A stretch of DNA of 64,000 bases from Takakia lepidozioides (Eukaryota; Plantae; Bryophyta): assembly GCA_030704615.1 (NCBI GenBank), contig CM060733.1, positions 59,148,001-59,212,000 on the forward strand. The letters are read 5' to 3'. Shown here one piece after another: positions 9,719 through 62,800 of this stretch (position 1 is its first letter; every line of letters begins with the position of its first letter). A model generated the notes under the pieces. It did no database searches. It had not been told where the DNA came from and saw only the letters and a list, made by a program, of their open reading frames with translations. The translations under genes and the position numbers were made by a program.

Positions 9719-9719
9719 T

Positions 9720-19139: not shown

Positions 19140-20563
19140 TCCATCGATCTCGCAGATGGTGAAGTTCTCACGTCCCTCTGTGGTTCTCCTTTGGCAGAAC
19201 GCACCTCAATAAAGGCCCCCACGTCACTTGTCGGGAGTCCCAACTTTCGCGCCGCCGCCGGTGTCATGAAGGAGTGCGACGCTCTTGTGTCCACCAACAA
19301 CGACACGTTAGTTCCGGATATTATCCCATCCACGAACAATAACTGACTCCCTTTACGCAGGGCGCCAGTTTCCTGATACAACTCACAAGAATAGTTGCCT
19401 ACCTTGCAAGTCCTGGCGACCACCGCTTCCACCAAGCGCCTGATGGTATCTTCCGACAGCTCCGTGGTTGCCCGAGTCATGTTCAATTGTCGAGGTTTTG
19501 TGTACTTCTTGGCCATGTGCCCGGGCTCCCCGCAATTGAAACACACTCCATCAAAGGTTGCCTTCTGTCCGCCATAAGCCGCTCCACCCGCTTTTCCTTT
19601 CGAAGCACCGGGTGCCGCCTTGACGTGTGAAGGCCCTCCCTTCGATTTCCACGTGCTGTTGTCACCGCGTGGCCTATCCCACTTCTTTTCCGGTCGGAAG
19701 GAGTCACCTTCCCGCTGGGTCTTCTTGTGGTTCAGCTCCGTACGGCCTTGTCTCTCACCCCTAGGGACATCCGAGAAACATTCAGCCCTCTCAATTGCCT
19801 CGTTCAAAGTCTTGGGTGGCTTCTCCTCCAACTTCCGCCTGGCCCGTGGGGCCAGTCCCGCCACAAAGTTGAAGACCATTTCTGGTTCTGCCATGTCCGC
19901 GACTTCGAGCAACAGCACATTGAAAGCCTGGACATACCCCCGAATGTCATCTATTTGCTTCAAATTCCTCATCTTGTCCCGGGCAAGCCAGGATGCGTTG
20001 AGGGGCACAAACTGTCTCTTCATCAATTCCTTGAACTCACTCCAGTTCAAGGTTTCCGGGCTTGGGCCTCGGTCGTGAAGGTGTTTCTGCCACCATTGTT
20101 GAGCATAGCCCCTCAAATAGGTGGGAGCCACTTCTACCCGATCCTCGTCACTCAACTTAGCCGCCCGAAAGTACTGCTCTAGCTCCAGGAGCCAGGTGTT
20201 GAGTGCCTTCCGATTTCGGACGCCCTCGAAGGTGCCGGGTTCCTTAGGCTTCACCTTAAACTTTGCCTTAGTGGAAGTGGCATTAGCCGCCTTCAACACG
20301 TCTTTCAACGTCCCGCCAAACTGCGCCAACAACCCTTCCCAAAAGGCTGCCGGCATGGGAGGCATCTCTTGGTTTGTCGGAGCTCTCAAGGATTCCTCGG
20401 GCTCCGACTCCTCGGATTCCTCCCGCTCTTGAGCGGCCTCGTTTTCGGAAACATGCATCGTTTCCTCAAACGGCTGCCTCGGTGACACGTCGCCCCCATC
20501 GGGCTCACCAGGATCATCATCTTTTGGGCCGTTCCGCTTTCGCTTCGGCTTGCCCGACCCCAT
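19118..20563 (-). CDS. Gag (zinc knuckle) and protease N-terminus of the chromovirus; frameshifting deletion near 19170
   Basis: KPKEPGTFEG capsid text, CFNCGEPGHMAKKY knuckle (last Cys lost), LVDTRASHSF protease site (DTG mutated). The likely start is ATG 20563. Confidence 0.88.
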   Translation of the reverse strand: MGSGKPKRKRNGPKDDDPGEPDGGDVSPRQPFEETMHVSENEAAQEREESEESEPEESLRAPTNQEMPPMPAAFWEGLLAQFGGTLKDVLKAANATSTKAKFKVKPKEPGTFEGVRNRKALNTWLLELEQYFRAAKLSDEDRVEVAPTYLRGYAQQWWQKHLHDRGPSPETLNWSEFKELMKRQFVPLNASWLARDKMRNLKQIDDIRGYVQAFNVLLLEVADMAEPEMVFNFVAGLAPRARRKLEEKPPKTLNEAIERAECFSDVPRGERQGRTELNHKKTQREGDSFRPEKKWDRPRGDNSTWKSKGGPSHVKAAPGASKGKAGGAAYGGQKATFDGVCFNCGEPGHMAKKYTKPRQLNMTRATTELSEDTIRRLVEAVVARTCKVGNYSCELYQETGALRKGSQLLFVDGIISGTNVSLLVDTRASHSFMTPAAARKLGLPTSDVGAFIEVRSAKGEPQRDVRTSPSARSMEWISFWG

Positions 20564-21348
20564 TATGAGGCCAATCCCAAGGACGATCGCGTACTGAACT
20601 CTAAGCTCTGATACCAAATGTCGCGCACCTCCCTTCGGTAAGCTCCCCTTCACGTCATAGTTACTCGCTTTGATGCGCGCGCCTGACTCCCAACCTGGCC
20701 GCCGGGCCAACTTGGAGCTTCGGCTGCTCACCGGGACATAACGGTCCCCCTTCGCTTCCCACTAAACCCTCCACCTATTTGGGACTAGTGGAATTCTCTT
20801 TGGTAGATGGCAGTCCGGAACAGCTCCCCACTCTTTGGTCGCTTTCCGGCTCACTCGCTTACTCATTAGTTTTTGGTTACCAACGGGCTTGCACCGTTCT
20901 CGGGGTTACTACTCCCTTATATATACTTCTGTAGCTGTCCGCGGGGGTTTCACAACTAGCCATGCCATTTTATGGCGAACCACCACGGAGATCCTCGATT
21001 CCCGGTGGTGAGTCGCGGTGAGTCTTGGCCCACTCACCGCGGCCCCAATGGACCGTGATGAGTCCCAAGACTCCCCACGACTCCCACCTCGAGGTCTCCA
21101 CCCCATGGTGAGTCCTATGCCACCCCCACTAAGTCCCGCTAAGCTACCCCCACCCCTTGTGGAGCCACCCCCACCGCAACCCGGTGTGCGGGGCTCCACC
21201 TAGTGAGTGCCTCCGCCTCCTTGAGTGCCTTGGGCACTCAAGGGTGCTTCAGCCCCCCATACCTATCGCTGCCGCTGCCCCCACTACAGGGGCAGCCCCT
21301 CATGTGTCCCGACCCCCTGCCCTCAAGGTAAAGGGCCGCGACAGTGGC

Positions 21349-23639: not shown

Positions 23640-26600
23640 TAGGTCAGGAAGGGCACAGCCTTTGACATAGATTGGCATAACTGGAGAGTGGGCATGGTTG
23701 CAAGGAATTGAGAAATGACATAACATAATTAAACCCTGTACTCTCAAGGCAGCCTCTGCCAAACGCGGCCAAAAAGGGGTTGGATTCTTTGTCCACGATT
23801 TCATGTTTGATAATTGTGAAATTATCAACAAGGGTTTGAGGTATGAGCATAGTATCCGGCTAAAACTGAATCTGAAGGGCCTGAATACGAAGGACCTCTT
23901 TCTGGGTTGTGTATACATGCCCATACAGGGGACCTTTAGTGTTGACGCAGACAAAGCCTTCGAAGATGTAAAACTGGACTGTGCTTCGTTCCTTGCCAAA
24001 GGTCAGGTGGTTCTATTGGGTGACTTCAATGCCCGGGTGGGCAAAGGTCTCCATCAGGACGATATCATTGGGCTTTTTGGTGAGGACGAGCTGAACTCTA
24101 ATGGCAGACAGTTAATTAACTGTCTGGAAGAGCTTCAGCTTTTGGCCTTGAATAACAGGACAAGAGGTGACCAAGTGCAGTGGACGTGTGGGAAAACCCA
24201 AACCGGGGAACGTTCCATTGTGGACTATATCATAATGGACATAAATTTGTTTCCCCAGTGTTGGTACCTCTGACCACTTCCTGGTTGGGACTGAGATCAA
24301 AAGGTGTTTTCCCAACACCAAGAGATCTGTGAAATGTTCAATTCGGAAGTGGCGCATAGAAAAATTCCATTATGAGAAGGTCAAGGCTGAGTATGTCCAG
24401 GCCTTGCAAGAGGCTCTCCCTCATTTTGTCCACTCGCTCCAAGAACTTCAGTCTCGCTCTGACAACGCAAGAAATGAAGTCGAAAGAGCAGTGGACTCTT
24501 GGGAGAGTTTCGTTTCCTCTGTGGCTGATAAGATCATTGGGAGGAAACTAATTGTCTACGGTAGAGCTGTTAATTGGTGGACCAATGAGATTAAACTCAA
24601 GATAGCTGAGAGACGAGCCCTCTATAAAGAGTGCTGCAATTTGAAATCCAACAGAGAATTGTGGGCAAGGTACTACCAGCTCCGTAAAGATATCAATCAG
24701 CTAGTTAGGTCTCAGAAGAAATTACACTGGGACAAGTTATACAGTGAAATAAACTCAAACCACCATGGTGGTAATGACAAGAAATTCTGGTTGGTCCTTC
24801 AACGTTTGTACAAGCCAAAAAATGGTCAGCAAGTACAAGCGCTGAAGACTACTAAAGGTGCAGTGGTGACTTCATCGGTCGACATTGTCAAAACCTTTGA
24901 AACTCACTACAGTATCCTTGGCATAACTTCCAGGTCTAACAGTGAGGGGTCTTCTGCTGAATGGAGGGACACAGTTGGAAAAACTATTCCTATGATTCAA
25001 AACAGCCCTGATGAACTGGAGTATATTTCAAGGGCTTATAACGCTCCCATTAGCTCTTCTGAGATTGTGGAAGCAATTGAACATTTAAACGGTTATAAAG
25101 CTGGTGGACCTGATGATATAGTCAACGAGCTTATCAAGCACGGTGGTGATCCCATGATAGAGGCCCTAGTTCTCCTCTTTAACCTTATCTGGAAGACTGA
25201 AATGATTCCCCTTCGCTGGCGACAGGGGGGCATTGTCAATCTATACAAGAAGGGTGACAGAGAAGAACCGGGGAACTACCGTGGTATCACACTCCTCAAT
25301 GCTGTTGGCAAGACATTCTGCAGAGTTATAAGTACCCGTCTCGAGGTTGATCTGGAGTCTAGAGGTTGTTTCCACGGAGGCCAAGCTGGCTTTCGGCGAA
25401 ACAGGGGCTGTGTGGATCATAACTTCACTCTAAGTCAGATTATCCAGGGAAGGAAAAAAGAAGGGAAACCCACTTATGTTGTTTTCCTGGATGTCAAAAA
25501 GGCTTATGACACAGTGTGGAGAGATGGCCTATGGTTCCGCCTCTGGTCTTGTGGGATCAAGGGAAAGATGTGGAGAGTTGTCCACAATTTGTATGCTCAC
25601 ACCAAAAGCTGTGTCACTGTCAACGGACAGAAGTCCAACTTCTTTGACATAGACCAAGGTGTAGCTCAAGGATGTACTCTCTCCCCTCTGCTCTTCAATG
25701 TTTTCATTAATCAACTCCTCGAGGATGTGGAAAGTGAGGGATTTGGGTTAAGGGTGGGTGATACCACCATACCAGCCCTTATGTTTGTGGATGACTTCGC
25801 AGGCATAGGGGAGACTCCAACCAACCAATCTCCAGGAGTTGATTGATTGCGCGACGAGATACTTTGATCTTTGGGGGCTAGAGGCTAATGTCAGCAAAAT
25901 GTGCAGTGGTAGCATTCAACGACAGAGGAGAGGGAGGAAGTGATCTTAAGTGGCAGTGGGGTAGCCAAGAGATCCCGGTCCTCCCTTCCTACACTTACCT
26001 GGGCGTTGAGTTTTCCTCCAATTGTAATTGGGATGCACATATACGGAAAGTTGTTCAAACTGGCAAGGGCAAAGCTCTGGGGCTTACTAAATTTTTCCAC
26101 TGCAGAGGGGTCAACTCTGAGGTTAAGAAAACCATGCTTTGTCGCGTTATTAGACCTGCCTTGGAGTACGGATCTGCAATATGGGTTGACAACTCCAACC
26201 AGGCTAAGTCTCTACAATCCATTCAAGTGGGGGTGCTTAAGGAGTGTATGTCAGCATGCTCCAAAACAGCCAATGTGGCTGTTTGGCATTCCGTCCTTAA
26301 GCTCCCGACGAGATGAATTCAAGGTCAGATGGTGGGGTCAGCTACAACATATGTCCAACACCAGATATCCGAAGTTAATCGACTCTATATCTTGGAAACA
26401 GGACCGCCCTGTCAAACAGGCTAAGTCCTGGCAGAAGAGAGTAGAAGAGATTCTCAAGGACCTGGACCTGGAACCGCAAGTCTTGACCCTGCTGGATAAA
26501 TCTGACTTAGAGGCTGTAGTGTCCAAAGCCATGTCTGTTGCTTGCCATGAGATTTTCTGATGAAAATGAAGTTAGGCAGAAAACTTCCCTGAACTTGTTT

Positions 26601-27125
26601 CCAGTCTGTGACATGGGGGAGGACATCTTGGATGACCTCAAGGGTCTACCCACTCTCGGCACTAGACTGAAATTTAAACTCAGGGCAGGAAGCCTACCGT
26701 TGAACAGCAAACAGAAGCAGAGAGGAAAGGGAGAGTGCAATTGCCCCATGTGTTTGCAACCTGAAGACAGTATTCATTTTCTGATACACTGTCCGGGGTT
26801 CTCTCACCAAAGAGATGCTCTCTCCAAATCTATCAAGGGAATTGTGCCTGTACCTCTGTTTACCAACTTTGAAAGTCTCGAGGCTGAGCCAAAAGCCCAG
26901 GCCCTTCTGAGGCCTAGTTTTTGGGCAAATCACACACAGCAGATTGATGCTTGTGTGAAGGGATTTCTAGAGGATATCTGGAAAACCTGGATTAATTCTA
27001 TATATGAAGGTAAGTCTTACTACCAACGTCAGCCCCTGACAGAGGTAGGTTCTGTCCCTTTTGTTCGCGCTCAAACTGGGCGCGGGGTCAATGGCCACAA
27101 GGCTACGGCAAACAACGTCTTATGA
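23640..27125 (+). mobile_element. 5'-truncated non-LTR retrotransposon (APE endonuclease + RT + C-terminal CCHC), RTEX-like; frameshifted
   Basis: GVGFFV, VYMP, LGDFNARVG, SIVDYI; NYRGITLL, FLDVKKAYDTVWRDGLW, GVAQGCTLSPLLF, MFVDD, YTYLG; CPMC...EDSIHFLIHCP. Confidence 0.9.
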
Positions 27126-27127
27126 GT

Positions 27128-28905
27128 ACATTCTTTCATTTCCTTAAAACGAAAGCAGGCTTCCCTAAAATCTCCCACCTTGCTTAGACTCTGGATGAGA
27201 CTAGCATAGGTGAAAACATCGGGGGTACACATGCCAGCAGCCATGTCTTTGTAAAGTGGGTAAGCGTCTTCCACTCTACCTGCCTTCCCAAGGCCATTGA
27301 TAAGAGAGTTATAGTTGACAACATTTGGCTCACAGCCCTTCTGCTTCAGTTCAATGAATAATTGATAAGCAGCATCCAGAATCCCTGCTTTGCCCAAACC
27401 ATCTATGAGGACACCATAAGCAATGGAGTCGGCATCAGGGCACAATCCATCCTCTCTCATCTCAAGAAAAAGCCAAACTGCCTCGTCCACTTTCTTTACC
27501 TGCCCTAAGCAATACATCAGGCTGTTGTAGGTGAGGACGTCAGGCCGACATCCCTGGACTTTCATTCGCCTGAAAAGCAACATGGCATCATCCACATTGC
27601 CTGCCCGGCCAAGACCATCAATGAATATGTTGAATGTAAGTGTGTTGGGCAGACAGTCTGACTCTTCCATCTTGTTGAAAACTTTACGAGCTCTGTCATG
27701 GTAGCCTCCTCTCACCAGCACTTGTATCAAGCAGTTGTAAGCCTCAACACTCACTGGCAATCCACAGTGCTCCATCTCCTTGAAGGCCTCCAATGCCTCA
27801 CCAATCAAATTGGCCCTGTGAAACAAACAGTGCTTCATGCAAGATACTGGAAAGCACTTAAGGTAAACACAAATTAAGCATACAATACTCCAGACATTTT
27901 CTACAAGTCTCAATAACTTAAGGGACATAAATTAGACAGCCTCAGTTCCTACACTGCTTTCCCAACAGGGCTATCTGGCATGGGGGTTTCTTATCCTCCC
28001 GGATTATTCTCTCAGCTACGTCTGAGGCGTGACAGCCTTTGAAGGGCTTGACCCGGCACAGACTAGAGTGGTCCTTAAGGGGAAAAAACAGCATGTGAGA
28101 ACGTCAACCTTGGGAGATGCAAGAAGGAACTCACAGCTCACAGCAATGCTACAAGTGACAGAGTGTAATGCAGCTCTAACATTAAAAGTACCTGCCATAG
28201 CTCCTCACCAGGGCCAAATAGGTGGCTGTGGACACCGGGCAGGACTCGTTCCGCATCTCCTCCAGCAATTGCTGCATTGCATCAAAGCGTCGTGCAGCCC
28301 CCAGTAGTCCAATCATCACAGAGTGTCACTGCCAGCTGCTCCAGTAGCTCCTTCGTCTCCGGACCCCATTTCTTCTCCCTAGGAAGCTTACTTATACGAG
28401 CAACGACCCCTAGCTCTTGAAACCTTTGCTGAGAGTTTGACCTACTGCCCTCTTCTTCTGCCCTTCTCATTGACGGTTGGAGAGACAATTCAGGAGAGTA
28501 GCATATATTCTCAAAGCTGGCACCTTCTGGTAGCTGGCCCACATCTTCACTAACACTCAAGTTTTCTTTCTGCGGCGAAGTACAAGCCTCCTGAACAAGC
28601 CCTGCTAAAGCAGATGCGGCACCGTGGAATGCCCGACATGAAGAGATACTCAAAGGTGCCTTCACAGATGGAGAATAATGGGATTGAGCACAAATCAATT
28701 TCCCCGAGTTAGAGCTGACAAACCTTCCACGAAACAGAATTGGCCGCAAACTTCCTGCTTGTATATTGGGTGCTCCTCTTGTACAAACACACAACCTGCT
28801 CTCGATTACCTCTACTTTTGACGAGTCCCCAGTACAATAACTATCCAAAATCTTGGCAAACCTTCTCGCTAACCTTCTGGCAAACCTTCCTCTCATACTC
28901 CCCAA
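27128..28905 (-). pseudogene. P-class PPR gene (At3g16010-like N-terminus), disrupted
   Basis: Exon 1 28905-28192: transit-like N-terminus, WGPETKELLE, deletion/frameshift near 28320, then RFDAMQQLLEEM...LVRSYGR. Exon 2 from 27815 has ~6 P motifs and is cut off at the LINE 3' end. Confidence 0.8.
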
Positions 28906-42400: not shown

Positions 42401-42614
42401 ACCCAGCTGGAGTAGATGGAGTAGATCCAGCTTTGCGATCCGGATCGAACATGATGAAAGAAGCAAGAAACCTGCCTATATTTTGTGCCACCCTTCACTC
42501 TTTTCAATCCAATTTTCCCGCCTCTCTATTCACAGTCCTGGCTCGCTCTCCAATCTGAGAGAGGCAGGATAAGTATAGCAGAGGTGAGAGGAAGGGTTTT
42601 TGCAAGCTTGGAAC

Positions 42615-43163
42615 ATGGCGGCGCTAGCTAGCGAGCGCGTCTTGACATGGCTGCTGGTGGGTGTGCTTGGGAGCGTTCTCATTGCTGGTAGCGAAGCTCG
42701 ATTGGACCTGGACACAAGGAAGCTCTGGGGATACTCCAGCAGTCCCCCTCCTCCATCTTCGCCATACTATTACACATCTCCTCCCCCACCTTCTCCTTCC
42801 CCACCACCTCCCTATGTGTACTCCTCTCCCCCGCCGCCTCCCTACGTCTATCCCTCTCCTCCTCCCCCATCTCCTTCCCCGCCTCCTCCCTACGTCTATC
42901 CTTCCCCTCCTCCCCCATCTCCTTCCCCGCCTCCTCCCTACGTCTATCCCTCTCCTCCTCCCCCATCTCCTTCCCCGCCTCCTCCCTACGTCTATCCTTC
43001 CCCTCCTCCCCCCTCTCCTTCACCACCTCCTCCCTACGTTTATCTCTCACCTCCTCCCCCTCTACCCTCCCCACCGCCTCCATACGTCTATCCCTCTCCT
43101 CCTCCCGTGTACTACTCTCCCCCAGTTCCTGTCACTTATCCCCCCCCACCTTCCGGTTACTAG
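42615..43163 (+). CDS. Extensin (HRGP) with signal peptide
   Basis: Hydrophobic N-terminus, then SPPPPSPSPPPPYVYP 48-nt repeats with YVY cross-linking motifs. Confidence 0.93.
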   Translation: MAALASERVLTWLLVGVLGSVLIAGSEARLDLDTRKLWGYSSSPPPPSSPYYYTSPPPPSPSPPPPYVYSSPPPPPYVYPSPPPPSPSPPPPYVYPSPPPPSPSPPPPYVYPSPPPPSPSPPPPYVYPSPPPPSPSPPPPYVYLSPPPPLPSPPPPYVYPSPPPVYYSPPVPVTYPPPPSGY

Positions 43164-46291: not shown

Positions 46292-46828
46292 ACTTCAGGA
46301 AATTGGAAGCTGGCAAAAGTTCTCATGTTCTAGCAGTCGTTGGACACAGATCAAAAACTCAGCAACAAACAGATCCTTCACAGTGGTGGGACAACAGGTT
46401 TACCAAGGTGAGGCTATCTTCATTTTGGATGTGATAGGGTTTTTCAAGGTGGATTGTCACTGAAGGCAGCACTATGACTGCAATTTGGTGCCTCCAGCCA
46501 GTCACCTAAATTACTGACAAATTGCTGATTTTTTTTTGTTGGGAAAAAGCAACAAAAATTAGATGCTCTCTGTAGGCTGCAGGTTCCCTGTTATTTGAGA
46601 AATGCTTGGGTTTTTGGTGGTCATAGCCTGGTCTTTGTGAGGCTGTTGTTCAAGTTCCAGCCCGCTCAGTTGCCCAGTGGTGTGTTTCGCAGAAAAGACC
46701 AAGATCACCAGACTTCAGGAATAAGCAGACAAGCAAGGGTTTGTCCAACCCTCCTTGGGCGAAACCAAAACTCTCTGCCATCGTACAAGGTCAAGCACAA
46801 TTTGGTGATAGCTGTAATGGAGCTTCAG
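46292..46828 (+). CDS. Two exons encoding an OSB-type PDF motif, upstream of the PLS-PPR exon
   Basis: 46292-46407 (catacag|...QQQTDPSQWWDNRFTK|gtgagg) and 46693-46828 (ttcgcag|KRPRSPDFRNKQTSKGLSNPPWAKPKL...ASG|gtcaag). Both are open and join in phase 0. Confidence 0.75.
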
Positions 46829-47067
46829 GTCAAGAATGCAATGGGTATTGTCTTGATGATAGTTGAAGGATTCAATTCAAAACAGGTCGAGTTGGTCCAG
46901 TGAACCCTGACTGTAGTTGACTACAGTGGTTTTCTGACCCTGTTAATGTGGCGCAAGGACCCGGGCCTCATGAACAGATCCACCTTTGCTGTATCTAGGA
47001 GCTTTGAGATACAGTGTGCGAGTTTGAGTTTTATTGGCTTAAAACTAACAGTTTGAAGTCATGCAGG

Positions 47068-49368
47068 ATGCCAGGGTTGAATCAAGCACAGGTTTTTCAG
47101 TCGGGTAACTTCAGCCTGACCACTGCACTTCACAGAAGACAAGGAGAGGGAGTAAAGATGAACTCCAGCACTTCTGAGGATGTGAAGACACTATGTAAGG
47201 CAGGACGACTGAAAGATGCCCTGCACATTTTGAACCTACGAGGCATGTCAACAGACACCAATACTTATGTGTGTCTCTTGCAAGAGTGCATCAGCATTAA
47301 AGGGCTAGCAGAGGGAAAGCAGGTGCATGCCCACATTCTCCTGAGTGGATTCAAGCCAAGCATCTTCCTACTCAACTCCGTTGTCAACATGTTTGCCAAG
47401 TGTGGGAGCTTAGTCGCTGCACGCCAAGTGTTCGACACAATGTTTGAACGAGATGTGTCTTCCTGGACTACAATGATTGCAGCATACGCGAAGCATGGGC
47501 GCAGTAGGGAGGCTTTCAAGATCTATGACGATATGATACAGGAAGGGGTGACGCCCAACAGGGTCACATTCATTTGTGTTCTTAAGGCGTGTGCCAGCCA
47601 AGGAACCCTGGAAAAGGGAAGGGAGGTCCATGCTGAGATCATCAAAGCTGGACTTGCGCCATACATTAATCTGGATAATACCCTTATTAACATGTATGCC
47701 AAATGTGGGAGCATGGAGGATGCACGTCGAGTGTTTGATAATATGGCTGAGCAAGATATTGTCTCATGGAATGCAATGATTGCAGGATATGCTCAGCATG
47801 GGTGTATGAAGGAGGCTTTCGGCATGCACGAGGAAATGATGCGGGAAGGAGTGGCACCCGACAATGTCACATTCATTTGCATCCTCAATGTGTGCGCCAG
47901 CCTGGCAGCCCTGGAGAAGGGCAAGGCAGTCCATTCTGACATTGTCAAGGCTGGACTTGTGTCTGTTGTCAATTTGAATAACACCCTTGTTCACATGTAT
48001 GGGAAGTGCGGGAGTGTGAAGGATGCACGCCAAGTGTTCAACAACATGGCTCAGCGAAATGTGATCTCATGGAATGCGATGATTGGAGGGTATGCTCAGC
48101 ATGGGTATGGTAGGGATGCTTTTGAGATGTATGAGCAAATGATATGGGAAGGGGTCACCCCGAATAAGGTCACATTCATTTGTGTCCTCAAGGCGTGTGC
48201 CAACCTGGCAGCCCTGGAAAATGGCAAAGCGGTCCATGCTAATATCATTCAAGCTGGACTTGGGCCAGATATCATTCTGGAGACTGCCCTTGTTGACATG
48301 TATGCCAATTGCGGGAGCGTGAAGGATGCACGTCAGGCATTTGAAAACATGGCTCAACGAGATGTGGTTTCGTGGAGTGTGATGATCACAGCATATGCTC
48401 AGCATGGGTTTGGTTGGGAGGCTTTCGAAATATATGAGCAAATGGTAGAAGAAGGAGTGATGCCAAACAAGGTCACTTTCATTTGCATTCTCAATGCGTG
48501 TGCCAGCCTTGCAGCCCTGGATAAGGGCAAAGCAGTCCATGCTGACATTGTCAAAGCTGGAATTGCACTGGATATAATTCTGGGGACTGCCCTTCTTGAC
48601 ATGTATGCTAAATGCGGGAGCATGCAGGATGCACATCATGTGTTTGACAATATGGCTCAACGAGATGTGGTTTCATGGAGTGCAATGATTGCAGGATATG
48701 CTCAGCATGCCTCTGGTAAGGAGGCTCTCGAGATGTATGAGCAAATGAAAAGGGGAGGGGTAACACCTGACAATGTCACGTTCATTTGCATTCTCAATGC
48801 GTGTACCAGCCTTGCAGCCCTAGACAAGGGAAAAGAGGTCCATGCTGATGTTGTCAAAGCTGGCATTGTTTCCTATATTAATTTGGATAATACCCTTATT
48901 GACATGTATGCCAAATGTGGGAGCATGACAGATGCGCAAGAAGTGTTTGACAATATGTTTAAACAAGATGTGGTCTCATGGAGTGCAATGATAGCAGGGT
49001 ATGGTCAACATGGGTTTGGTAGGGAGGCCCTCCAACTATTTGAACATATGAAACAGGAAGGCTTGAAGCCGAATGATATCACCTTTGTATCACTTCTCTC
49101 TGCATGTAGTCATGCGGGCCTAGTGGAGGAGGGCTGTCACTACTTTGATTCCATTAGTGAAGATCATGGCCTCACTCCCACAGAGGAGCATTTTGGCTGT
49201 ATGGTGGATCTACTTGGCCGCGCAGGGCAATTGGAAGAGGCAGAGGACTTCGTTAACCAAATGCCGATCGAACCTGGTGCTTTGGTGTGGGGGGCCTTGC
49301 TTGGTGCATGCAGAATTCATGGTGATGTTGAGCGAGCAGAACGCGTGGCAAAATGTCTTGTGACGTAG
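47068..49368 (+). CDS. PLS-class PPR protein (organellar RNA-editing factor type), ends after E1
   Basis: Five P1-L1-S1 triplets (303-nt period), then P2-L2-S2 (HFGCMVDLLGRAG) and E1 (VWGALLGACRIHG). Premature TAG at 49366-49368. Confidence 0.93.
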   Translation: MPGLNQAQVFQSGNFSLTTALHRRQGEGVKMNSSTSEDVKTLCKAGRLKDALHILNLRGMSTDTNTYVCLLQECISIKGLAEGKQVHAHILLSGFKPSIFLLNSVVNMFAKCGSLVAARQVFDTMFERDVSSWTTMIAAYAKHGRSREAFKIYDDMIQEGVTPNRVTFICVLKACASQGTLEKGREVHAEIIKAGLAPYINLDNTLINMYAKCGSMEDARRVFDNMAEQDIVSWNAMIAGYAQHGCMKEAFGMHEEMMREGVAPDNVTFICILNVCASLAALEKGKAVHSDIVKAGLVSVVNLNNTLVHMYGKCGSVKDARQVFNNMAQRNVISWNAMIGGYAQHGYGRDAFEMYEQMIWEGVTPNKVTFICVLKACANLAALENGKAVHANIIQAGLGPDIILETALVDMYANCGSVKDARQAFENMAQRDVVSWSVMITAYAQHGFGWEAFEIYEQMVEEGVMPNKVTFICILNACASLAALDKGKAVHADIVKAGIALDIILGTALLDMYAKCGSMQDAHHVFDNMAQRDVVSWSAMIAGYAQHASGKEALEMYEQMKRGGVTPDNVTFICILNACTSLAALDKGKEVHADVVKAGIVSYINLDNTLIDMYAKCGSMTDAQEVFDNMFKQDVVSWSAMIAGYGQHGFGREALQLFEHMKQEGLKPNDITFVSLLSACSHAGLVEEGCHYFDSISEDHGLTPTEEHFGCMVDLLGRAGQLEEAEDFVNQMPIEPGALVWGALLGACRIHGDVERAERVAKCLVT

Positions 49369-49640
49369 GCTCCAAAGGACTGCCTATGTACGTTTTGCGC
49401 AATGGTCAATCATGTATTGTGCGGGTATTCAAGCAAAGTTGGCCAAACAATTAGGACATGGGTTTCAGGAAGGAGCCAGGACGGAGCTGCCTCTGGTGTA
49501 GGAGTGAAAGGAATCTTCTTTTTGCAACCACAGTGAAAATTTAGCTGTTGGATTTGGACTCATCACCACATCTGTGTGATGCCTATCCACTTCACCAAAA
49601 GCCTTAGGGTACCTCGTCACTGACACACCACTACCAGCAA
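49369..49640 (+). pseudogene. Degenerate E2/E+/DYW deaminase remnant
   Basis: MGFRKEPGRSC (PG box, 49458-49490), KESSFCNHSENLAVGFGLITT and KSLRVPRH*H (compare HSEKLA and KNLRVCxDCH), with deletions and frameshifts. Confidence 0.8.
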
Positions 49641-51126
49641 AAAATGTTGGGTGGCTTTGGGGTTGTTCGTAAAGATGAGTGGGTACAATCAGCGAGAACG
49701 TCAAATACTGTCTGGTAGAATGGCCAGAACTGAGTGTGCTGTCTCCAGGTTTGATACAGCTATGAATCACCACATTTTTCTGCCCTTTTTGACACTACTA
49801 GGTCAGAAGTCAGAACCACTCTTCAAGCAGGACCCAACTCACATACCCAGCAAATGATGTGTACTGTAAGCAGCTACAGAAGCAGAGGGAAATACAGACA
49901 TGCCTCTCAGCAAAAGATCTGAATATCTCTCTTCAACAAAAGCAATCCTTTTTGGTTGGGTGCATTGGTGGGCTGCTTGAAGCCACTTGGGAATCCCCAG
50001 CTCCTTGCCCGACCCACATCCAAGTTCATCTCCCAGACTGTTGCTTGAAATTGTGTAAGGCCATACCCACAACGACCACCACTTGCTGGATGGGGTTTCT
50101 TGTGTGGTTGAAAAAAGCACATGTATCATTAAAAATTGAATTTCTGTCAGCTGCTTAGAGCAATGAGCAGACAAGTCACGGACAATCTGAGTGATTGCAT
50201 AGGATGTGTGGACAATTTTGCAGATTTTTTGAGGAACGGTACACAGCAAGACTGAGAAGTCATGATTTATAGCTGGCTACTAATCTAAGTTTCAGCAGAC
50301 TTGTTCGGGCTTTCCAGATTTCCGATAGAAAACCCTTTACATATTTGTCAAATCATGCATTTGATTGAGGTGTTCCCAACAAGCAGGAACCACACATTGT
50401 TAGAGTGTGGCAACTTCAAAAACTCCTCCTTTCCTGCATCTATATGGTTCAACCTCGTCACTGCTGTTACATTCCAAGGTCGCCCACCCTGACATACTAC
50501 TTGCCAAGGGCCTCCTTATCTCCTCAAAACCAATACCCAACTTATGGTGTCACTTCTAATGAAGCCACTTTAACCCTTAAATGCCCAGCAATCATTTTTA
50601 GTAATCTTTTTTATTTTTTCCCAAAAACTGAGCACAAAAAGGTGAGTCATTTCTGGAAAAATGACAATTTTAAAATTCTGACCGCACTTTACGTGCATAC
50701 CTACTGACGGTACCTGCTGCATGGAATCAGGTGAAAATCATGAAAATGCCACAGTTGAAACCCATTAGTTTCTATGAAGGCTGGATTCCGACATGCTTGT
50801 TTTTGGGCATGGATGAATGACAACATGGATGAAGCAGGATGGTTATGCTCGTTAAGTGTGACGGATGACGCACGAGTGTAGCAGGATGAACCTCATAGTT
50901 AGTCCTAGATGGATGAAGATAGTGTAGCCGTGACGTACTAAGCGCCGGTACAGCAGCTAGCTGTATTAAGTTAGAATTGTCTTTAGTAAACAGTTAGAAT
51001 ATGATTAGATTAGGTGATGTGGCATGATTGTGTGGCCTAGCTGGGACGGCATCTGGCTGGCCAATGACGGGCCGTTTGCCCAAGATACTTAAGTGCTATA
51101 TAAACCAATATGCTCATGCAAAATGG

Positions 51127-52360: not shown

Positions 52361-55300
52361 TGTCAAGGACGAGAACATGAAATCATGGTAGATCATGGTA
52401 AATCATGGTAAATCATGGTAACTTTCGGTAACTTGATAACTTCTGGTATTTACTCCTGGTAAGTTCCTATGGGCTATGTCCGTGACATCACCCCCTCCTC
52501 TAGCGCCGAGTTCCTCGAGGAACGGTAAAATCTTGGACTTGCTTAGAGTTGGAGAAAATCCAAAATCCGACGAATGGTACTTGCCAAGTATTCGGCTCTT
52601 CGTTCTTGACTCAAATGATTTATAGGTCTCTGCAACCATCGATAGTGTCCAACACCTTGAACTTAGGACCACGTAGTAATTTGAGCATTCTGATTTTCGA
52701 AGCTGCTTTCAAACATGATTTTGTTGCCCTCTGGGTCGGAAGCCTCAACCTCCAACAGAATTATCAGACTTCAAGTAGGCTTCACTTGCCGTCGTACGGG
52801 GTCCAGACGAGGAAGTACGCGTCGCATTGGTGGCCCATCGTCTCGAGAGCGTCGGCGTGATATTGAAGATCGTGAGAGTCGGAACGGCTGATCTGGTAGT
52901 TGGGTAAGCGACAACTCCAATGTATCTGGTTCTTGTGACTCCATGCTGCCAATACAAGATGCAAGAACGCTGGAAGTGTAGCTATATATACTGATGTGTG
53001 GTGTTCTTCTCTCCTTAGCGTGTATCAGGTACATTGAATGTGGAGTCTTCTCCTTGAAGCTAGCTTGGCTGACATCATCGTTGTGACGTCTCATTGACGT
53101 GTAGCTCAGGGCTTAGCTGGATATCGTTGATGAAACTCTTAGACTTTGTCAGATGCATTGACGAGGTTGGATGACGGTTCCCACGTTCGTTCGCTGATGT
53201 CGTAGCATTTCCAATGTACGAAATACTCAAGACGTTTATACTTGATGCGAGAGTCTAGGACTTCGTCGACTTCATACTCAATTTCCTGATTGACTTCGAT
53301 TGGTGGAGGTGGTACGGAAACTCTCCGTGGAATATTCGATGGATAATACAACTCCAATAATGAAACATGAAAAACTGGATGGATGCGCATACTTCGTGGG
53401 AGTTCAAGCCGAAAATTGACCGGATTTATTTGTCGAATAATTTTGAATGGTCCCAGGCGTTTATAATCCAACTTCTTTGATGGTCGCGAGGTTTGTATGT
53501 CCCGTCGAAGAAGCCACACACGATCTCCGACCTTGAACTGGGGTTGGAGTTGACGACGTTGATCTGCATACTCTTTGTATTGTTTTTGAGCTTCTGCGAG
53601 GTGGGATGTAAGCTCCTTGTGAATCGTAGCAAGATGAATAGCAAGGTTTTCTACAGCAGGGCTTCCAACAGTTTTCATGTGGAAAAGGTTTGGTCGAGGA
53701 TGACGACCATAATTGGAAAAAAAATGGAGTTTGTTTGGTCGAAGAATGTATAGTGTTGTTGTAGGCAAACTCAGCCAATGACAGAAGGTCAGTCCAACTA
53801 TCTTGGTGATAATTTATTGTACATCGAAGATACTGCTCCAAAATCTGGTTTGCACGTTCAGTTTGACCATCAGTCTGTGGATAATTAGTTGTAGAGAGAT
53901 TGATCTTAGTATCCAATATGTGAAATAATCCCCTCCAGAAATTTGATATGAACGGTGGTCCTCGATCAGATACGATGTCATTCGGGAGTCCATGAATACG
54001 GTAGATATTATTGAGGAAGAGTCTTGCAGTTTCCTCGTCGGTCGCTCTAGCACACGTGTCGCAAGATTTTATAAATTTTTTGACGAGTTTCCACATCTGC
54101 GGCTACCAATAGTCCCTGGATATCAACTCCAATGTTTTGTTGAAGCCGAAATATCCTGCAGCCGGAAGATCATGACATGTTTGAAAAATTCGAAGTCGTG
54201 TAGGTCCTGGAGGTACATAAAGAAGTCTCTTGAAGTAAACTAAATCATCTTTGAATTCGAAGTCGTTTGTAACATGTGGGTTGTCTCGAGGTTGATTTAG
54301 TTGACTTCATAGTATCGTAGCAAAATGGTCGCTCTTTAGTGCTTCTTGAATCTCTTTTATGATCTCTGCATCGTCATAGGTGGACATGGATAGCATATTC
54401 AATTGAAGATTTGCTGGTTTCAGGATGATAGATTTTTGTTTGTCAAAAGCTGCATCCCCTTCTTTTGGCGCAAGATACGATCGTCAAGAGAGAGCATCTG
54501 GTTTTCCTTGAAGATGTCCGGGATGCTAGGTAATAACAAAATCAAACCTTGCTAGTAACATATTCCATCTCGATTGACGTCGATTCAAAACACGAGCACT
54601 CATAGAATATTTGAGGTTTTTGTAGACAGTGACCTGATGTTCAGCTCCCTCCAATAGATGTCGCCACTCCTCAAAAGCATCGATAATCGCTAGAAGTTCT
54701 TTGTCATGGATTTCATAATTGATCTCCACAGCGGAAAATTTGCGAGAACGAAAACCAACAGGGTGAAGTCGACCATCTATACCGTATTGAGAGAGTACCG
54801 CGTCAAGTGCAAAGTCCGATGCATCTGCTTCTAAGAAGAATGGTTTAGATGGGTCTGCATGTACCAGTATGGGAGCCATTGTAAATGTCTGCTTCAGCCT
54901 TTCAAATGTCTGGTCAGCCTTCTCGTCCCATACAAATTTGTCCTTCTCTGTGAGTCGTGTCAATGGTGCAGCAATTTTGGAGTAGTTATTGATGAAAATT
55001 CTATAGAAATTTGCAAAGCCCAGAAAATATTGTACATCTCGGACCGAAGTTGGTTTAATCCACTCGATGATGGTTTGTATTTTCTTCTGATCCATAAAGA
55101 CGTCTTTGTCGGAAATAATGTAGCCCAGAAATTCGACCTCAGATTGATGGAAAAGACATTTCTCCAACTTGGCATATAGTCTTTTTTCTCTTAATTTATG
55201 AATGACAAGGCGTACATGGCGGCCATGTTCTTCTTCATTCTGTGAAAATATCAAAATGTCGTCCAAATAGATGACTACATTCCGCCCAATCTATAACTTA

Positions 55301-57783
55301 TCACAGACGGAGTTGGCTGCATTACGTGAATACATTGATGAAAATTTGTCGAATCACTTCATCCGACATTCAAAATCACCCGTGGGGGCGCCTATCTTGT
55401 TTGTGAAAAAGAAGGACGGATCATTACGCATGTGTGTTGACTATCGCGGTATCAACAAAATCACAATCATAGAATCGGTTATCCGTTGCCGCTGATTTCT
55501 GGGCTTCTCGACCAGCTGGGACAAGCGAAGATTTTCACCAAAATCGACTTGAGATGAGCTTATAACCTTGTACGGATAAAAGAAGGAGACGAATGGAAAA
55601 CAGCTTTTCGAACAAGGTATGGACATTTTGAATACAATGTTATGCCTTTCGGTCTTACAAATGTTCCAGCAATTTTCCAATATATGATGAATGACATCTT
55701 TCGAGAATTTTTTAAATGACTTGGCTCCTTCTTATAACTCAATTGCACAGTCATAAGGTCGATGTTCTGGGAATATTTCTGCATTTTTCTTTTCGAAGAC
55801 ATCTTTGAAATCTTGATATTGAGCGGGTAATGTTGAAGTACATTTGTCTGTTGTGGTCTTGATCGGAGTCGCATAAAGTGCAAATGCCGCCTCATTTTTT
55901 GTAGCTCTTATGAAAGCTCTAGCTCCAAGGAATAAGGATTGAATACCTTTGATATTTCTACATTTTTGTCTTGGAGAAATTTTTCGCGATCGCCAATCGA
56001 TGTCGGGATTGTGAAGTACGAAGCAGGGAAGTCCAAGGATCACAGGATTCGTTGAAGACTGGATGACATTGAAAACAATATGTGATGCTTGATCTTTAAG
56101 CTTCACTTCAAGTGATCGAGTTTCATGGTACACATTTCTTGATGCTAATGGTCGTCCATCGATGACTTCAACGGGGGCCGAGAGTTTCTTCTTTACGAAC
56201 GTTAAATTGTTTTGTTTCGCAAAGTTTTTGTCCATAAAACAAGCTGAAGCTCCTGAGTCCAAAAATGCTTCTACAGTGATATCTCGATTTTGCACTCTGA
56301 TTTTTATCGGAACTGTGAAGCAAGGTGTAGGGTCTGGACGTAGAAAGAGACCATTTTTCGGTAAGGAATTTGTGGTGTCCAGCCGCATGATCCCTACTGT
56401 GACTGGACATCTTCGTTTTCCAACCTCCTCGTATCGAACACTTGAGTTGAGCCCCGAGTTTTGAATCTTCTCTTGTTGGGGTAGTTTAATGCTATGTGAT
56501 CTTCTTCTCCGCAATAGAGGCATAATCCACTCGAGCGTCATCTTTGTTTATCTTGTGGCGTCAATGGCTTGAATCGAACAACATCAATCTGCATAGGATC
56601 ACTACTGGATGTCTGATGGGTCGTTGTGTTTGGTGTCGTAGTAGTAGTGGCATGATGCGTCGTAGACCATCCAGATCACGGTGCAAACCAAGATAGGGCA
56701 GTGCCTGACAGAATGGTGCCCACGAATCCCACTTGAATACCTTCATCGGGATAGCGTTGTGGATGTAGTCGTAGGAACAGTCGTACTTGTTGAACAAAAC
56801 TGCGAAATCTTGATCTCGTCCCATCAAATTTCTCGGGCATGTTAATCTTTGGTTCTCTCGTAATCTGTTGAAGAAGAACCGTTGCAATAGGAGATGTTGC
56901 AGTAGGGACTTGTATGGTTGAAGATCGATTGTTCAACTCCTTTTAACTCTGAAATTTGTTGTTGCAAATTGTGGAGAGCGTTGCCAAGATCTTGAGACTG
57001 ATCAGCTTGCAATTGGGCGGTAGATGCATGAAGTTCTTGCATCTGGAGTTGAAGACTCTGTAATGTGGTGACCATTTCTACAAATGTGCCTTCCATCTTA
57101 ACTAACTAAGGAACAAACTTTAGTCTCGCCAAACTGTCAAGGACGAGAACATGACAGAACACAAACAAAAGATCAGACTAGAGGTACAAGACTAGACAAG
57201 AAGTCAAGGTCGGCGTGGCCGAATGCATGGTAGGTGAACATGAATCAAGATGATCTTTATAACAATGGACAAGAGTACAAACTACTGGAACTCGACTCGG
57301 ATACTGGAATGCTGGAAACTGGACTGGAATACCAGATACTGGAAACTGGACTGGATACTGGAAGCTGGACTGGAGTACTGGACTTGGAACAAGAGTAGCT
57401 TGAACTTATGTTGGCGAGACTGAAGAGTGTCCAGTCTCGCCTCCTATATATACTGGCTACTAAGAAGCTTCCCCAAGAAGCTTCCCCTATGGAGGTTTCT
57501 TGCTGGAGAAGTTTCCAAGATTAAATAAAGGTTTCTTGATAGAGAAGCTTCCTCAAACAAAAGAGGTATCTTGATGGAGAAGTTTCCTCCAAAGGAAGCT
57601 TCTTGAGTAGTTTCCCAAGTTACTCTTGGTAATTTGGTAAACTCCCGATAACTTGGTAAGTAATGGTAAATCATGATAGATCATGATAAATCACGATAAG
57701 TCATGATAACTTTCGGTAACATGGTAACTTGGTAACTTTTGGTATTTACTCCTGGTAAATTCCTCTGGGCTATGTCTGTGACA
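52361..57783 (-). mobile_element. Tcn1-like Ty3/gypsy chromovirus, degenerate, with internal inversion and deletions
   Basis: 5' LTR 57135-57783; internally deleted 3' LTR 52361-52487; PPT gaggagggggtga. gag (EPKINMPEKFDG), PR (FLDSGAS), RT, RH (EADASDFA..YEIHDKELLAI), IN, chromodomain (YEVDEVLDSR..YFVHWK). The flanks do not form a TSD. Confidence 0.93.
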
Positions 57784-59838: not shown

Positions 59839-62800
59839 TGTCACGAACATAGCCCAGAGGAACTTACCAGGAGTAAATACCAGAAGTTACTAAGTTACAA
59901 TGTTACCGGAAGTTACCATGACTTACCGTGATTTATCATGATCTACCATGATCTACCATGATTTACCATTACTTACCAAGTTACCGGGAATTTACCAAAT
60001 TACCAAGAGTAACTTGGGAAACTGCTCAGGAAGCTTCCTTTGGAGGAAACTTCTCCATCAAGATACCTTCTTTGTTTAAGGAAGCTTCTCCATCAAGAAA
60101 CCTTTGTTTAATCTTGGAAACTTCTCCAGCAAGAAATCTCCATAGGGGAAGCTTCTTAGGGAAGCTTCTTAGTAGCCAGTATATATGGTACCCCAGTCCA
60201 GTTTCCAGCATTCCAGTATTCGAGTCGAGTTCCAGTATCTTGTACTCTTGTCCATTGTTATAAATATCATCTTGATTCATGTTTACCCACCATGCATTCG
60301 CCCACACCGACCTTGACTTCTTGTCTATCTAGTTTGATCTCTTGTTTGTGTTCAGTCATGTTCTCGTCCTTGACAGTTTGGCGAGACTAAAGTTTGTTCC
60401 TTAGTTAGTTAAGATGGAAGGCACATTTGCGGAAATAGTCGCCACATTGCAGAGTCTTCAGCTCCAGATGCAAGAACTTCGTACCTCTACCGCCCAATTA
60501 CAAGCTGATCAGTCTCAAGATCTTAGCAAAGTTCTCCACAATTTGCGACAACAAATTTCAGAGTTAAGAGAGTCAAACAATGGATCTTCAACCATACGAA
60601 TCTCTACTGCAACAGCTCCTACTGCAACGGTTCCTCTTCAACAGATTACGAGAGAACCAAAGATCAACATACCGAGAAATTTGATAGGACAAGATCAAGA
60701 TTTCGCGGTTTTGTTCAACAAATATGACTATTCCTACGACTACATCCACAACACTACCCCGATGAAGGTATTCAAGTGGGATTCGTGGGCACCCTTCTAT
60801 CAGGCACTACCCTATCTTGGTTTGCACCGCTATTAGAATTTTTTTTGCATTTACTATACAATTTTGAAGTATTCATGTCCGAGTTCACTGCAACATTTGG
60901 AGAAAATGATAGGGAGAGAGTTGCAGAGACAAAGATGCGAAATCTTCGACAAGGAGCACGTCCTGCTTCCGTTTATGCTGCCTTATTTCGACAACTTGTG
61001 TGCGACCTCGACTGGAATGAGAAGAGCCTCATTAGTCAGTTTCGATGTGGGCTAAAGAAGGATATAAAAGATTTGTTGTTGACAATGCCAAACTTGAGCA
61101 TACTGAGTGAATTCATCACCCAAGTCATTGCATGCGATAATCGTTTGTTAGAAAGACGTCAAGAGAAGCGATCTAGATGATCGACGACGCATCATGCCGC
61201 TGCTACTACGGCACCAAACACAACGATCCATCAGACATCCGGTAGTGATCCTATGCAGATTGATGCTGTCCGATTCAAGCCATTGACGCCACAAGAAAAA
61301 CAAATACGGCGCTCGAATGGATTATGCCTCTATTGCGGAGAAGAAGATCACACAGCATTAAACTGCCCCAACAAGAGAAGATTCAAAACTCGGGGCACAA
61401 CTCAAGTGTTCGATACGAGGAGGTCGGAAAACGAAGCTGTCCAGTCACAGTAGGGACCATGCGGCTGGACACCACAAATTCCTTACAAAAAAAAAATCTC
61501 TTTCTACCTCCAGACCCTACACCTTGCTTCATAGTTCCGGTAAAAATCAGAGTGCAAAATCGAGATATCTATGTAGAAGCACTTTTGGACTCAAGGGCTT
61601 CGGCATGTTTTATTGATAAAACCTTTGCGAAGCAACACAATTTAACGCTCGTAAAGAAGAAACTATCGGCCCCCGTTGAAGTCATCGATGGACGACCGTT
61701 AATATCAGGAAATGTTGACCATGGAACTCGACCACTTGAAGTGAAGCTTGAAGATCAAGCATCACATATTGTTTTCAACATCATCCAGTCTCCAACGAGT
61801 CTTGTGATCCTTGGACTTCCCTGGTTCGTACTTCACAATCCTGACATCGACTGACGATCGCGAAAAATTTCTCCAAGACAAAAATGTAGACATATCAAAG
61901 TATTCAACCCTTGTTCCTTGGAGCTAGAGCTTTCATGAGAGCTACCAAAAAGGATGCGGCATTTGCACTTTATGCGACTCCGATCAAGACCACAGCAGAC
62001 AAAGGTACTTCAACATTACCCACTCAATATCAAGATTTCAAGGATATCTTTGAGAAGAAAAATGCAGACATATTGCCATAACATCGACCTTATGACTGTG
62101 CAATTGAGTTACAAAAAGGAGCCCAACCACCATTCGGCCCAATCTATAACTTATCACAGACGGAGTTGGCTACATTACGTGAATACATTGATGAAAATTT
62201 GTCGAAGAACTTCATCCGACATTCAAAATCGTCTGCGGGGGCGCCTATCTTGTTTGTGAAAAAGAATGAGGTATCATTATGCATGTGTGTGGACTATCGC
62301 GGTCTCAACAAAGTCACAATCAATAATCGTTATTTGTTGCCGCTGATTTCTGGGCTTCTCGACCAACTGGGACGAGCGAAGATTTTCACCAAAATTGACT
62401 TGAGATGAGCTTATAACCTTGTACGGATAAAAGAAGAAGAGGAATGGAAAACAGCTTTTCGAACAAGGTATGGACATTTTGAATACAGTGTTATGTCTTT
62501 CGGTCTTACAAATGCTCCAGCAATTTTCCAACATATGATGAATGACATCTTTCGAGAATTTTTAGATGACTTTGTAGGCATCTATTTGGACGACATTTTG
62601 ATATTTTCTCAGAATGAAGAAGAACATGGCCGCTATGTACGCCTTGTGCTTGATAAATTAAGAGAAAAATGACTATATGCCAAGTTGGAAAAATGTCTTT
62701 TCCATCGATCTAAGGTCGAATTTCTGGGCTACATTATTTCCGACAAAGGCGTCTTTATGGATCAGAAGAAAATACAAACCGTCATCGAGTGGATTAAACC

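What the first reader, a model, noticed from the sequence alone, without database searches (positions are those of the whole stretch)
46292..49640. OSB-type ssDNA-binding 'PDF' motif exons spliced onto a PLS-PPR(-E-DYW) RNA-editing factor
Seen: two short open exons, too short for the ORF track, encode DPSQWWDNRFTK|KRPRSPDFRNKQT..GL..NPPW..KL. They lie ~250 bp upstream of the PPR exon on the same strand. A phase-1 donor (46828) and a phase-1 acceptor (ccag|GG, 47075) join them in frame; a phase-2 alternative exists (aatgg|gtattg to tgcag|G). Known: the PDF motif (W..FF.NP..WWDNR..K.NP..PDFKHK...LW....P.WV) is the ssDNA-binding C-terminal repeat of plant organellar OSB proteins, and PLS-E-DYW PPRs are C-to-U RNA editors. 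Inference: a family of PDF-PPR-DYW hybrids could tether an editor to nucleoid ssDNA or R-loops for co-transcriptional editing, or even direct a deaminase to DNA. This copy lacks the two conserved LW segments through in-frame deletions, so its PDF motif may itself be decaying. I cannot confirm novelty without a search.
Basis: partly seen in the sequence, partly recalled or inferred. Interest (0 to 1): 0.9.

Follow-up and report, generated by a model that had tools for sequence, protein, structure and literature searches.

The report
Decayed PDF-motif PPR editing-factor gene

Summary
Two short exons (ending 46407, starting 46693) flank a GT-AG intron. Joined, they match a PDF-motif profile at 51 bits, upstream of a 784-aa PLS-class PPR ORF on the same strand.

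The family-level idea is also right. A profile built only from PPR-linked motifs retrieves proteins named OSB3 that carry an SSB fold plus C-terminal PDF motifs. Seventy-two PPR proteins seen here carry 1-3 N-terminal PDF motifs, some with complete E and DYW domains. They come from Diphasiastrum, five Sphagnum species, Ceratodon, Physcomitrium, Calypogeia and Adiantum. None of 33 gymnosperm hits had the motif. The intron inside the motif sits at the same position in two Diphasiastrum genes and three window exons.

This copy is degenerate. Its PDF lacks helix 1 and the LW strand. No in-frame start codon precedes it. A stop falls inside E1, E2 and the PG box are deleted, and the DYW remnant is frameshifted without its CxxCH motif. 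RNA-like contigs suggest it is still transcribed and spliced, with the second acceptor nearer 47067 than 47075.

No searchable paper links the PDF motif to PPR or DYW proteins. First-stage readers noted the same architecture about 21 times elsewhere in this genome. ssDNA tethering and DNA deamination remain untested.

The parts
46292..46407 (+). Exon A: first half of the PDF motif (DPSQWWDNRFTK, 46369-46407). Helix 1 of the motif is lost. The exon probably extends 5' to about 46127.
   Evidence: tblastn hits of Diphasiastrum homologues fall at 46369-46410. Bin depths suggest contig cover from about 46127.
46408..46692 (+). Intron 1: 285 nt, GT-AG, phase 0, at the conserved position inside the PDF motif (...R..K | ..PDFKHK).
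   Evidence: One search gives the sequence. Depth is zero in 46455-46585, and paralogue contigs are joined exactly at this junction. The intron sits at the same position in L002 and L003 and at 9409(-) and 12690(-).
46693..46828 (+). Exon B: second half of the PDF motif (KRPRSPDFRNKQTSKGL-----SNPPWAKPKL) with a 5-residue deletion of the LW strand. An alternative donor lies at 46844.
46829..47074 (+). Putative intron 2, or an inserted stretch (alternative bounds 46845-47066). It carries 4 in-frame stops. Two mapped Diphasiastrum homologues have no intron here.
   Evidence: One search shows the stops. Depth is about 0 in 46848-46978, and an exact contig starts at 47065. In L002 and L003 the PDF second half runs straight into the PPR array. 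The stretch is unique within the window.
47075..49368 (+). PLS-class PPR array (ORF 47014-49368, 784 aa) ending with P2-L2-S2 and a truncated E1. The stop is at 49366-49368.
   Evidence: Pfam PPR_2 E 9e-119 and PPR E 7e-103. Best homologues are Diphasiastrum PLS PPRs at 51-54% identity. The E1 alignment is cut by the stop.
47418..49028 (+). Tandem array of 5.3 PLS triplets: period 303 nt, 77% matches, no indels.
49427..49651 (+). Frameshifted DYW-deaminase remnant. HSE is kept, stops are present, CxxCH is lost, and about 50 codons of E1/E2/PG box are deleted before it.
   Evidence: tblastn alignments to the C-termini of DYW-bearing homologues. Translation.

Best explanation
The locus is a degenerate, probably still transcribed, member of a large family of nuclear genes for organellar PLS-class PPR-E-DYW RNA-editing factors.

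In intact members, the N-terminus between the transit peptide and the first PPR carries one to three copies of the ~55-residue PDF motif, otherwise known from the C-terminus of OSB ssDNA-binding proteins. Each PDF copy is split by a conserved phase-0 intron.

In this copy:
- the PDF motif has lost its first helix and third strand;
- no in-frame start codon precedes it;
- the reading frame stops inside E1;
- E2 and the DYW deaminase are deleted, frameshifted and have lost the zinc-binding CxxCH.

It therefore cannot edit on its own and is most likely a young pseudogene from birth-and-death turnover of the family.

Inferred, not shown, for intact relatives: PPR arrays bind RNA with the N-terminal repeats on the 5' side. 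A PDF module abutting the first PPR would therefore sit at the 5' edge of the RNA footprint. It would most simply act as a non-sequence-specific single-strand nucleic-acid clamp or nucleoid anchor that raises local affinity.
For: - Exons and frames.
- PDF profile match of the spliced peptide: 51 bits, HMM positions 13-61, with a 5-residue gap.
- PPR identity.
- Truncated E1, deletion, frameshift and stops in the DYW remnant.
Several have a full E, E+ and DYW (P0206, P0199; P0023, P0046, P0052, P0063 end in ...GDYW).
- Taxa: Diphasiastrum, Sphagnum, Adiantum; Calypogeia, Ceratodon; Physcomitrium.
- An uninterrupted 1371-aa ORF with 3 PDF motifs plus PPRs on a 4.7-kb Logan contig.
- Homology to OSB: a profile of PPR-linked motifs hits SSB-fold proteins named OSB3 at E 1e-30 to 1e-65.
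- Conserved intron position.
- Spliced paralogue contigs, and exact-match contigs on this locus with empty introns.
Against: - The 2.35-kb PPR ORF is still open, and exact-match contigs suggest expression, so decay is recent or the PLS part may still be used.
- Many annotated Diphasiastrum paralogues also end inside E1, E2 or the early DYW. Truncated forms might work with a DYW supplied in trans.
- An upstream exon supplying a start codon cannot be excluded.
- The runs are only guessed to be RNA, and no contig was shown to bridge this locus's own exon A-B junction.
- The proposed role of the PDF module has no experimental basis here. OSB PDF motifs are reported to prefer ssDNA over RNA (PMC4166229).
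Confidence: 0.75

Rival explanations
1. The gene is functional. It encodes a PLS (E1-truncated) PPR protein, with or without the shortened PDF module. It would act as a specificity factor that recruits a DYW deaminase in trans, as E-class PPRs do in seed plants.
For: The 784-aa ORF is intact. Exact-match contigs lie on 47065-47184, 47312-47572 and 49299-49700, with empty introns. Truncated paralogues are commonly annotated in Diphasiastrum.
Against: No in-frame ATG precedes the PDF exon, and upstream ATGs open short dead-end frames. The stop cuts E1 itself rather than falling after E2. The PDF lacks invariant W8, F12, L42 and nearly invariant W43. The intervening 246 nt carry stops and are absent from the mapped homologues.
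Confidence: 0.2
2. The PDF-like exons and the PPR ORF are unrelated neighbours: a remnant of an OSB gene next to a PPR gene, or a chance motif match.
For: This locus's own exon B to PPR junction is not directly documented.
Against: The same order recurs in 72 proteins from six genera and on one uninterrupted contig. It recurs again within the window at 9-13 kb. No SSB/OB-fold coding sequence lies nearby. The profile score is far above chance.
Confidence: 0.03
3. For the family as a whole: the PDF module tethers the editing factor to single-stranded organellar DNA (nucleoids, R-loops) for co-transcriptional editing, or directs the DYW deaminase to DNA.
For: The PDF motif of AtOSB1 is reported sufficient for ssDNA binding (PMC6963530), and OSBs prefer ssDNA over dsDNA or RNA (PMC4166229). 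Motif homology is shown.
Against: No binding, localisation or editing data exist for any PDF-PPR protein. The motif directly abuts the first PPR, which fits an RNA-side role equally well. This copy cannot test the idea.
Confidence: 0.2

Closest known systems
[quoted passage not shown] 2006 as summarised in PMC4166229, PMC6963530 and PMC13393729)
   Same: They share the ~50-55-residue PDF motif (W..FF.dPsqWWDnR..K....PDFKHK...aLW....nPpWV). A profile made from PPR-linked copies hits proteins named OSB3 at E down to 1e-65. The motif can be repeated 1-3 times in both.
   Different: OSBs have a transit peptide, an SSB-like OB fold and C-terminal PDF motifs. Here there is no OB fold, the motif is N-terminal, and it is followed by a PLS PPR array. 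The PDF-internal intron of the PPR genes is absent from the Euphorbia OSB3 gene.
PLS-E-DYW PPR RNA-editing factors (e.g. Physcomitrium PPR56 and PPR65, Arabidopsis DYW-class PPRs)
   Same: PLS triplets, P2-L2-S2, E1/E2 and a DYW cytidine deaminase in intact relatives. Best hits are PLS PPRs.
   Different: The extra N-terminal PDF module is not listed as an auxiliary motif for PLS or DYW proteins (PMC3858427, PMC9459714). This copy has lost E2 and DYW.
PPR proteins with auxiliary nucleic-acid domains (PPR4 with RRM, PPR-SMR, PRORP with NYN)
   Same: The same principle: a PPR tract fused to a second nucleic-acid-binding or catalytic module.
   Different: Those are P-class proteins with Pfam-defined domains. 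The PDF motif has no Pfam model, so domain surveys miss it.

Membership tests
PDF motif (as in OSB proteins) | Conserved Pro-Asp-Phe triad within a ~50-aa motif | tested here: met
   The PDF triad is at 46708-46716, within ...SPDFRNK....
PDF motif (as in OSB proteins) | Significant profile similarity to bona fide OSB PDF motifs | tested here: met
   Profile A1 hits SSB-fold proteins named OSB3. The window's spliced peptide scores 51.2 bits against the same profile.
PDF motif (as in OSB proteins) | Complete motif including the N-terminal W..FF helix and the central LW strand | tested here: not met
   HMM positions 1-12 are unmatched and 5 residues are deleted. Invariant W8, F12, L42 and nearly invariant W43 are absent.
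PDF motif (as in OSB proteins) | Binds single-stranded DNA | not testable with these tools
   Known only for Arabidopsis OSB1 and OSB2 (PMC6963530, PMC4166229).
OSB protein family | SSB-like OB fold N-terminal to the PDF motif(s) | tested here: not met
   No SSB match in the exons or the ORF. PDF-PPR homologues show only PPR, E and DYW families.
PLS-class PPR-E-DYW editing factor | Array of P, L and S type PPR motifs | tested here: met
   PPR_2 E 9e-119 with 12 stretches. 303-nt triplet periodicity.
PLS-class PPR-E-DYW editing factor | Complete E1 and E2 motifs | tested here: not met
   A stop at 49366 falls inside E1. About 50 codons covering the rest of E1, E2 and the PG box are missing.
PLS-class PPR-E-DYW editing factor | DYW deaminase with HxE and CxxCH zinc sites and a C-terminal DYW | tested here: not met
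   Only a frameshifted remnant at 49427-49651. HSE is kept, CxxCH is replaced, stops are present and there is no terminal DYW.
PLS-class PPR-E-DYW editing factor | Start codon and organelle transit peptide | tested here: inconclusive
   There is no in-frame ATG between the stop near 46243 and exon A. Homologue N-termini find nothing upstream. A distant upstream exon is not excluded.

The most novel reading that the evidence does not exclude
PDF-PLS-PPR-E-DYW proteins are an ancient, so far undescribed class of organellar editing factors. They are present in liverworts, mosses, a lycophyte and a fern, and appear absent from seed-plant PPRs. Their OSB-type module would bind single-stranded organellar DNA or nascent RNA and so couple site-specific C-to-U editing to the nucleoid or to transcription. 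In the extreme version, it would give a DYW deaminase access to ssDNA.
Probability: 0.2. Interest if true: 0.85.

Novelty: new variant of a known kind. Interest (0 to 1): 0.6.

Why it matters
Plant organellar RNA editing is usually described as a PPR tract plus E/DYW, with MORF, ORRM and OZ helpers in seed plants.

An extra, well-folded module borrowed from the OSB genome-maintenance proteins sits in front of the PPR tract in many editing factors of bryophytes, a lycophyte and a fern. That would be a new component to test.
- It could explain how early land plants edit without MORF proteins.
- It links RNA editing factors to the nucleoid.
- It matters for engineering PPR-DYW editors, because heterologous assays routinely cut off everything upstream of the first PPR (PMC10482289).

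The motif has no Pfam model, which probably explains why two 2026 surveys of editing factors and of OSB genes do not mention it (PMC13386178, PMC13393729).

The locus itself is only a decaying copy. Its value is as a pointer to the family.

Tried and rejected
- Pfam on the two short exons found no family, because Pfam has no PDF model.
- PDB sequence search with the PDF profile gave 0 hits. Foldseek and VIA-align on the AF2 model (pLDDT 91.6) found nothing above Z 2.8. The fold therefore has no solved relative, and no function could be read from it.
- A region-limited homologue search with the Ceratodon PDF region scored only 5 candidates and was uninformative.
- The look-up of encoding contigs found nothing for P0002, P0023 or P0305.
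- Zaegel et al. 2006 (PMC1785405) is not held, so I could not check whether that paper mentions PDF motifs outside OSBs.
- I tested whether the PDF-internal intron is shared with OSB genes. It is not in Euphorbia OSB3, where both PDFs lie in one exon. No lycophyte OSB gene was examined.
- A tree of 122 PDF motifs places 49 of 52 PPR-linked motifs in one weakly supported group (81/88), together with short fragments. This is suggestive of few fusion events, but 62 columns cannot prove it.
- The species of the window could not be determined. Diphasiastrum loci share only 63-75% DNA identity over PPR repeats.
- Read laying allows a single call, so the unaligned 49 nt of the exact contig at 47065 and this locus's own A-B junction could not be inspected further.
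Full report
**1. What is in the sequence**

In one reading frame (register of 46201) the + strand encodes ...TDPSQWWDNRFTK, ending at 46407 before gtgagg. After a 285-nt intron ending ...tttcgcag, it continues from 46693 with KRPRSPDFRNKQTSKGLSNPPWAKPKLSAIVQGQ....

The same frame holds a 784-aa ORF at 47014-49368. It is a PLS-class PPR array (Pfam PPR_2 E 9e-119, PPR E 7e-103). The array contains 5.3 tandem PLS triplets of 303 nt at 77% identity without indels.

**2. Is the motif really an OSB-type PDF motif?**

The best homologues of the PPR ORF are PLS PPRs of the lycophyte Diphasiastrum complanatum, at 51-54% identity. By a simple pattern, 30 of the top 120 hits carry the N-terminal consensus EQLWQEFFSDPSQWWDNR..KK.PKYPDFKHK.T.EGLW....LNPPWVKAK, in 1-3 copies.

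I aligned 23 of these PPR-linked motifs (A1) and searched 1.84 billion representative proteins with the profile. This gave 1243 hits at E up to 0.001. The strongest non-PPR hits are 350-550-aa proteins with an SSB/OB fold (PF00436) followed by 2-5 C-terminal copies of the motif. Their sources name them 'protein OSB3, chloroplastic/mitochondrial' (Amborella, Anthurium) and 'organellar single-stranded DNA binding protein 3' (Euphorbia). The homology is therefore solid.

The window's spliced A+B peptide scores 51.2 bits against the same profile. Pfam has no model for the motif.

AlphaFold2 on A1 gives a confident small helix-strand-strand-helix module (pLDDT 91.6). It has no match among solved structures.

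**3. Is there a PDF-PPR family?**

Yes. All lie within the first ~340 residues except in one apparently tandem-fused gene model. Their sources:

- Diphasiastrum complanatum: 23 of 38 hits.
- Calypogeia fissa: 4 of 4.
- Ceratodon purpureus: several DYW proteins.
- Five Sphagnum species.
- Physcomitrium patens: UniProt N0DT03, a 740-aa PLS protein.
- Adiantum capillus-veneris.

These assignments rest. None of 12 Cryptomeria or 21 Ginkgo hits has the motif.

Complete PDF-PLS-E-E+-DYW architectures exist: P0206 and P0199, and P0023, P0046, P0052 and P0063, which end in ...GDYW. One 4.7-kb Logan contig carries an uninterrupted 1371-aa ORF with three PDF motifs and a PPR array. This argues against a gene-model artefact.

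In two Diphasiastrum genes the PDF motif is split by an intron exactly after ...R..K. The same donor position occurs three times in this window: 46407, 9409(-) and 12690(-). In those two genes the second half of the motif runs straight into the PPR exon.

An angiosperm OSB3 gene has no intron there. A tree of the motifs groups 49 of 52 PPR-linked copies together, but only with weak support.

**4. State of this copy**

- The PDF match covers only HMM positions 13-61. The first helix (invariant W8, F12) is replaced, and five residues including the conserved L42 and W43 are deleted.
- Upstream in frame there is a stop near 46243 and no ATG. The ATGs present open short dead-end frames.
- Between exon B and the PPR array lie about 246 nt with four in-frame stops. 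These are absent from the mapped homologues.
- At the 3' end the frame stops at 49366, inside E1.
- About 50 codons (rest of E1, E2, PG box) are missing.
- The DYW remnant at 49427-49651 is in another frame, contains stops, keeps HSE and has lost CxxCH and the C-terminus.

The locus cannot encode a PDF-PPR-DYW editor.

**5. Expression**

Two small public runs of one coded organism (kind guessed as RNA) hold contigs with 0-1 mismatch on 47065-47184, 47312-47572 and 49299-49700. Depth is zero in 46455-46585 and about 0.26 or less in 46848-46978, the two putative introns.

Contigs from paralogues are joined at 46401 to 46691 with GATA between. That reconstructs ...WWDNRFDK|KR..., the homologous exon junction, so the runs do contain spliced RNA.

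- This locus's own A-B junction was not shown.
- The exact contig starting at 47065 favours the acceptor 47066|47067 over 47075.
- Bin depths suggest exon A runs from about 46127 without use of the 46291 acceptor.

I read the locus as a transcribed, spliced, recently disabled copy. A functional truncated PLS protein remains possible at about 0.2, because many annotated paralogues are also truncated.

**6. Mechanism**

Shown here: homology, architecture, the conserved intron, and the decay of this copy.

Inferred: in intact members the PDF module lies 10-45 residues before the first PPR. It would therefore sit at the 5' edge of the bound RNA. It could act as a non-specific single-strand clamp, or as an anchor to ssDNA or the nucleoid, as OSB PDF motifs bind ssDNA (PMC6963530, PMC4166229). 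Nothing here discriminates between these roles.

**7. Novelty**

- No paper in the library holds 'PDF motif' together with 'DYW'.
- The only paper holding 'PDF motif' together with 'pentatricopeptide' is a replication review; the passages I read from it concern OSB proteins only.
- The Physcomitrium PPR catalogue lists no auxiliary motif for PLS or DYW proteins (PMC3858427).
- A 2026 kingdom-wide survey of editing-factor domain fusions does not mention SSB or single-stranded DNA (PMC13386178).
- A 2026 survey of OSB genes and PDF domains never mentions PPR (PMC13393729).
- The founding OSB paper could not be read.

The proteins are in public databases as 'hypothetical'. The architecture is therefore unremarked rather than unseen.

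First-stage readers of this scan flagged the same architecture about 21 times elsewhere in this genome, none followed up, and a second decayed locus in this window.

**8. Verdict**

- Observation: confirmed.
- Interpretation: partly supported.
- Locus: a decaying member of the family.
- Family: a new variant of a known kind and worth a dedicated study.

Noticed in passing
window 8976-13050 (-): A second, more decayed PDF plus PLS-PPR locus. First-half PDF exons end at 9409 (EEKLWDEYSSNPSKWWDNRDKK|gt) and 12690 (MEQSWHEFFKDPSRWCDNRNRK|gt). Frameshifted second-half pieces (PDYKHK..., ...NPPWV) lie at about 12830-12990. PLS fragments and a short PPR-derived tandem array lie at about 9700-10700.
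   Followed up: partly
P0163 (Coptis chinensis KAF9616283.1); P0152 (Striga hermonthica CAA0829756.1); P0121 (Kingdonia uniflora KAF6142360.1): PDF motifs also occur in other annotated architectures. One has three PDFs in front of a kinesin motor. One has three PDFs in a 1063-aa protein named 'Interactor of constitutive active ROPs 2'. One 1160-aa protein has 13 PDF copies plus a weak SSB match. These may be gene-model fusions or real proteins.
   Followed up: no
window 47418-49028 (+): The PPR array is built of 5.3 near-regular 303-nt PLS triplets at 77% identity with no indels. This implies recent internal tandem duplication or conversion, unlike the usual divergent triplets.
   Followed up: partly
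window 16050-20731 (-) and 53139-56541 (-), 61324-61854 (+): Ty3/gypsy-type LTR retrotransposon ORFs (gag, protease, RT-RNaseH-integrase-chromodomain; an 848-aa pol ORF) and fragments of a second, related element.
   Followed up: no
window 23803-27125 (+): A run of ORFs that look like a non-LTR (LINE-type) endonuclease and reverse transcriptase. It abuts a P-class-looking PPR ORF at 27071-27928 (-).
   Followed up: no
window 42600-43163 (+): ORF with a signal-peptide-like start and long SPPPP/YVY repeats, resembling an extensin-type cell-wall protein.
   Followed up: no
Diphasiastrum paralogues P0002, P0007, P0015, P0020, P0021, P0025: Many annotated PDF-PPR paralogues end at different points within E1, E2 or the early DYW. 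This suggests widespread ongoing truncation or decay, or trans-acting E-class use, in this family.
   Followed up: no
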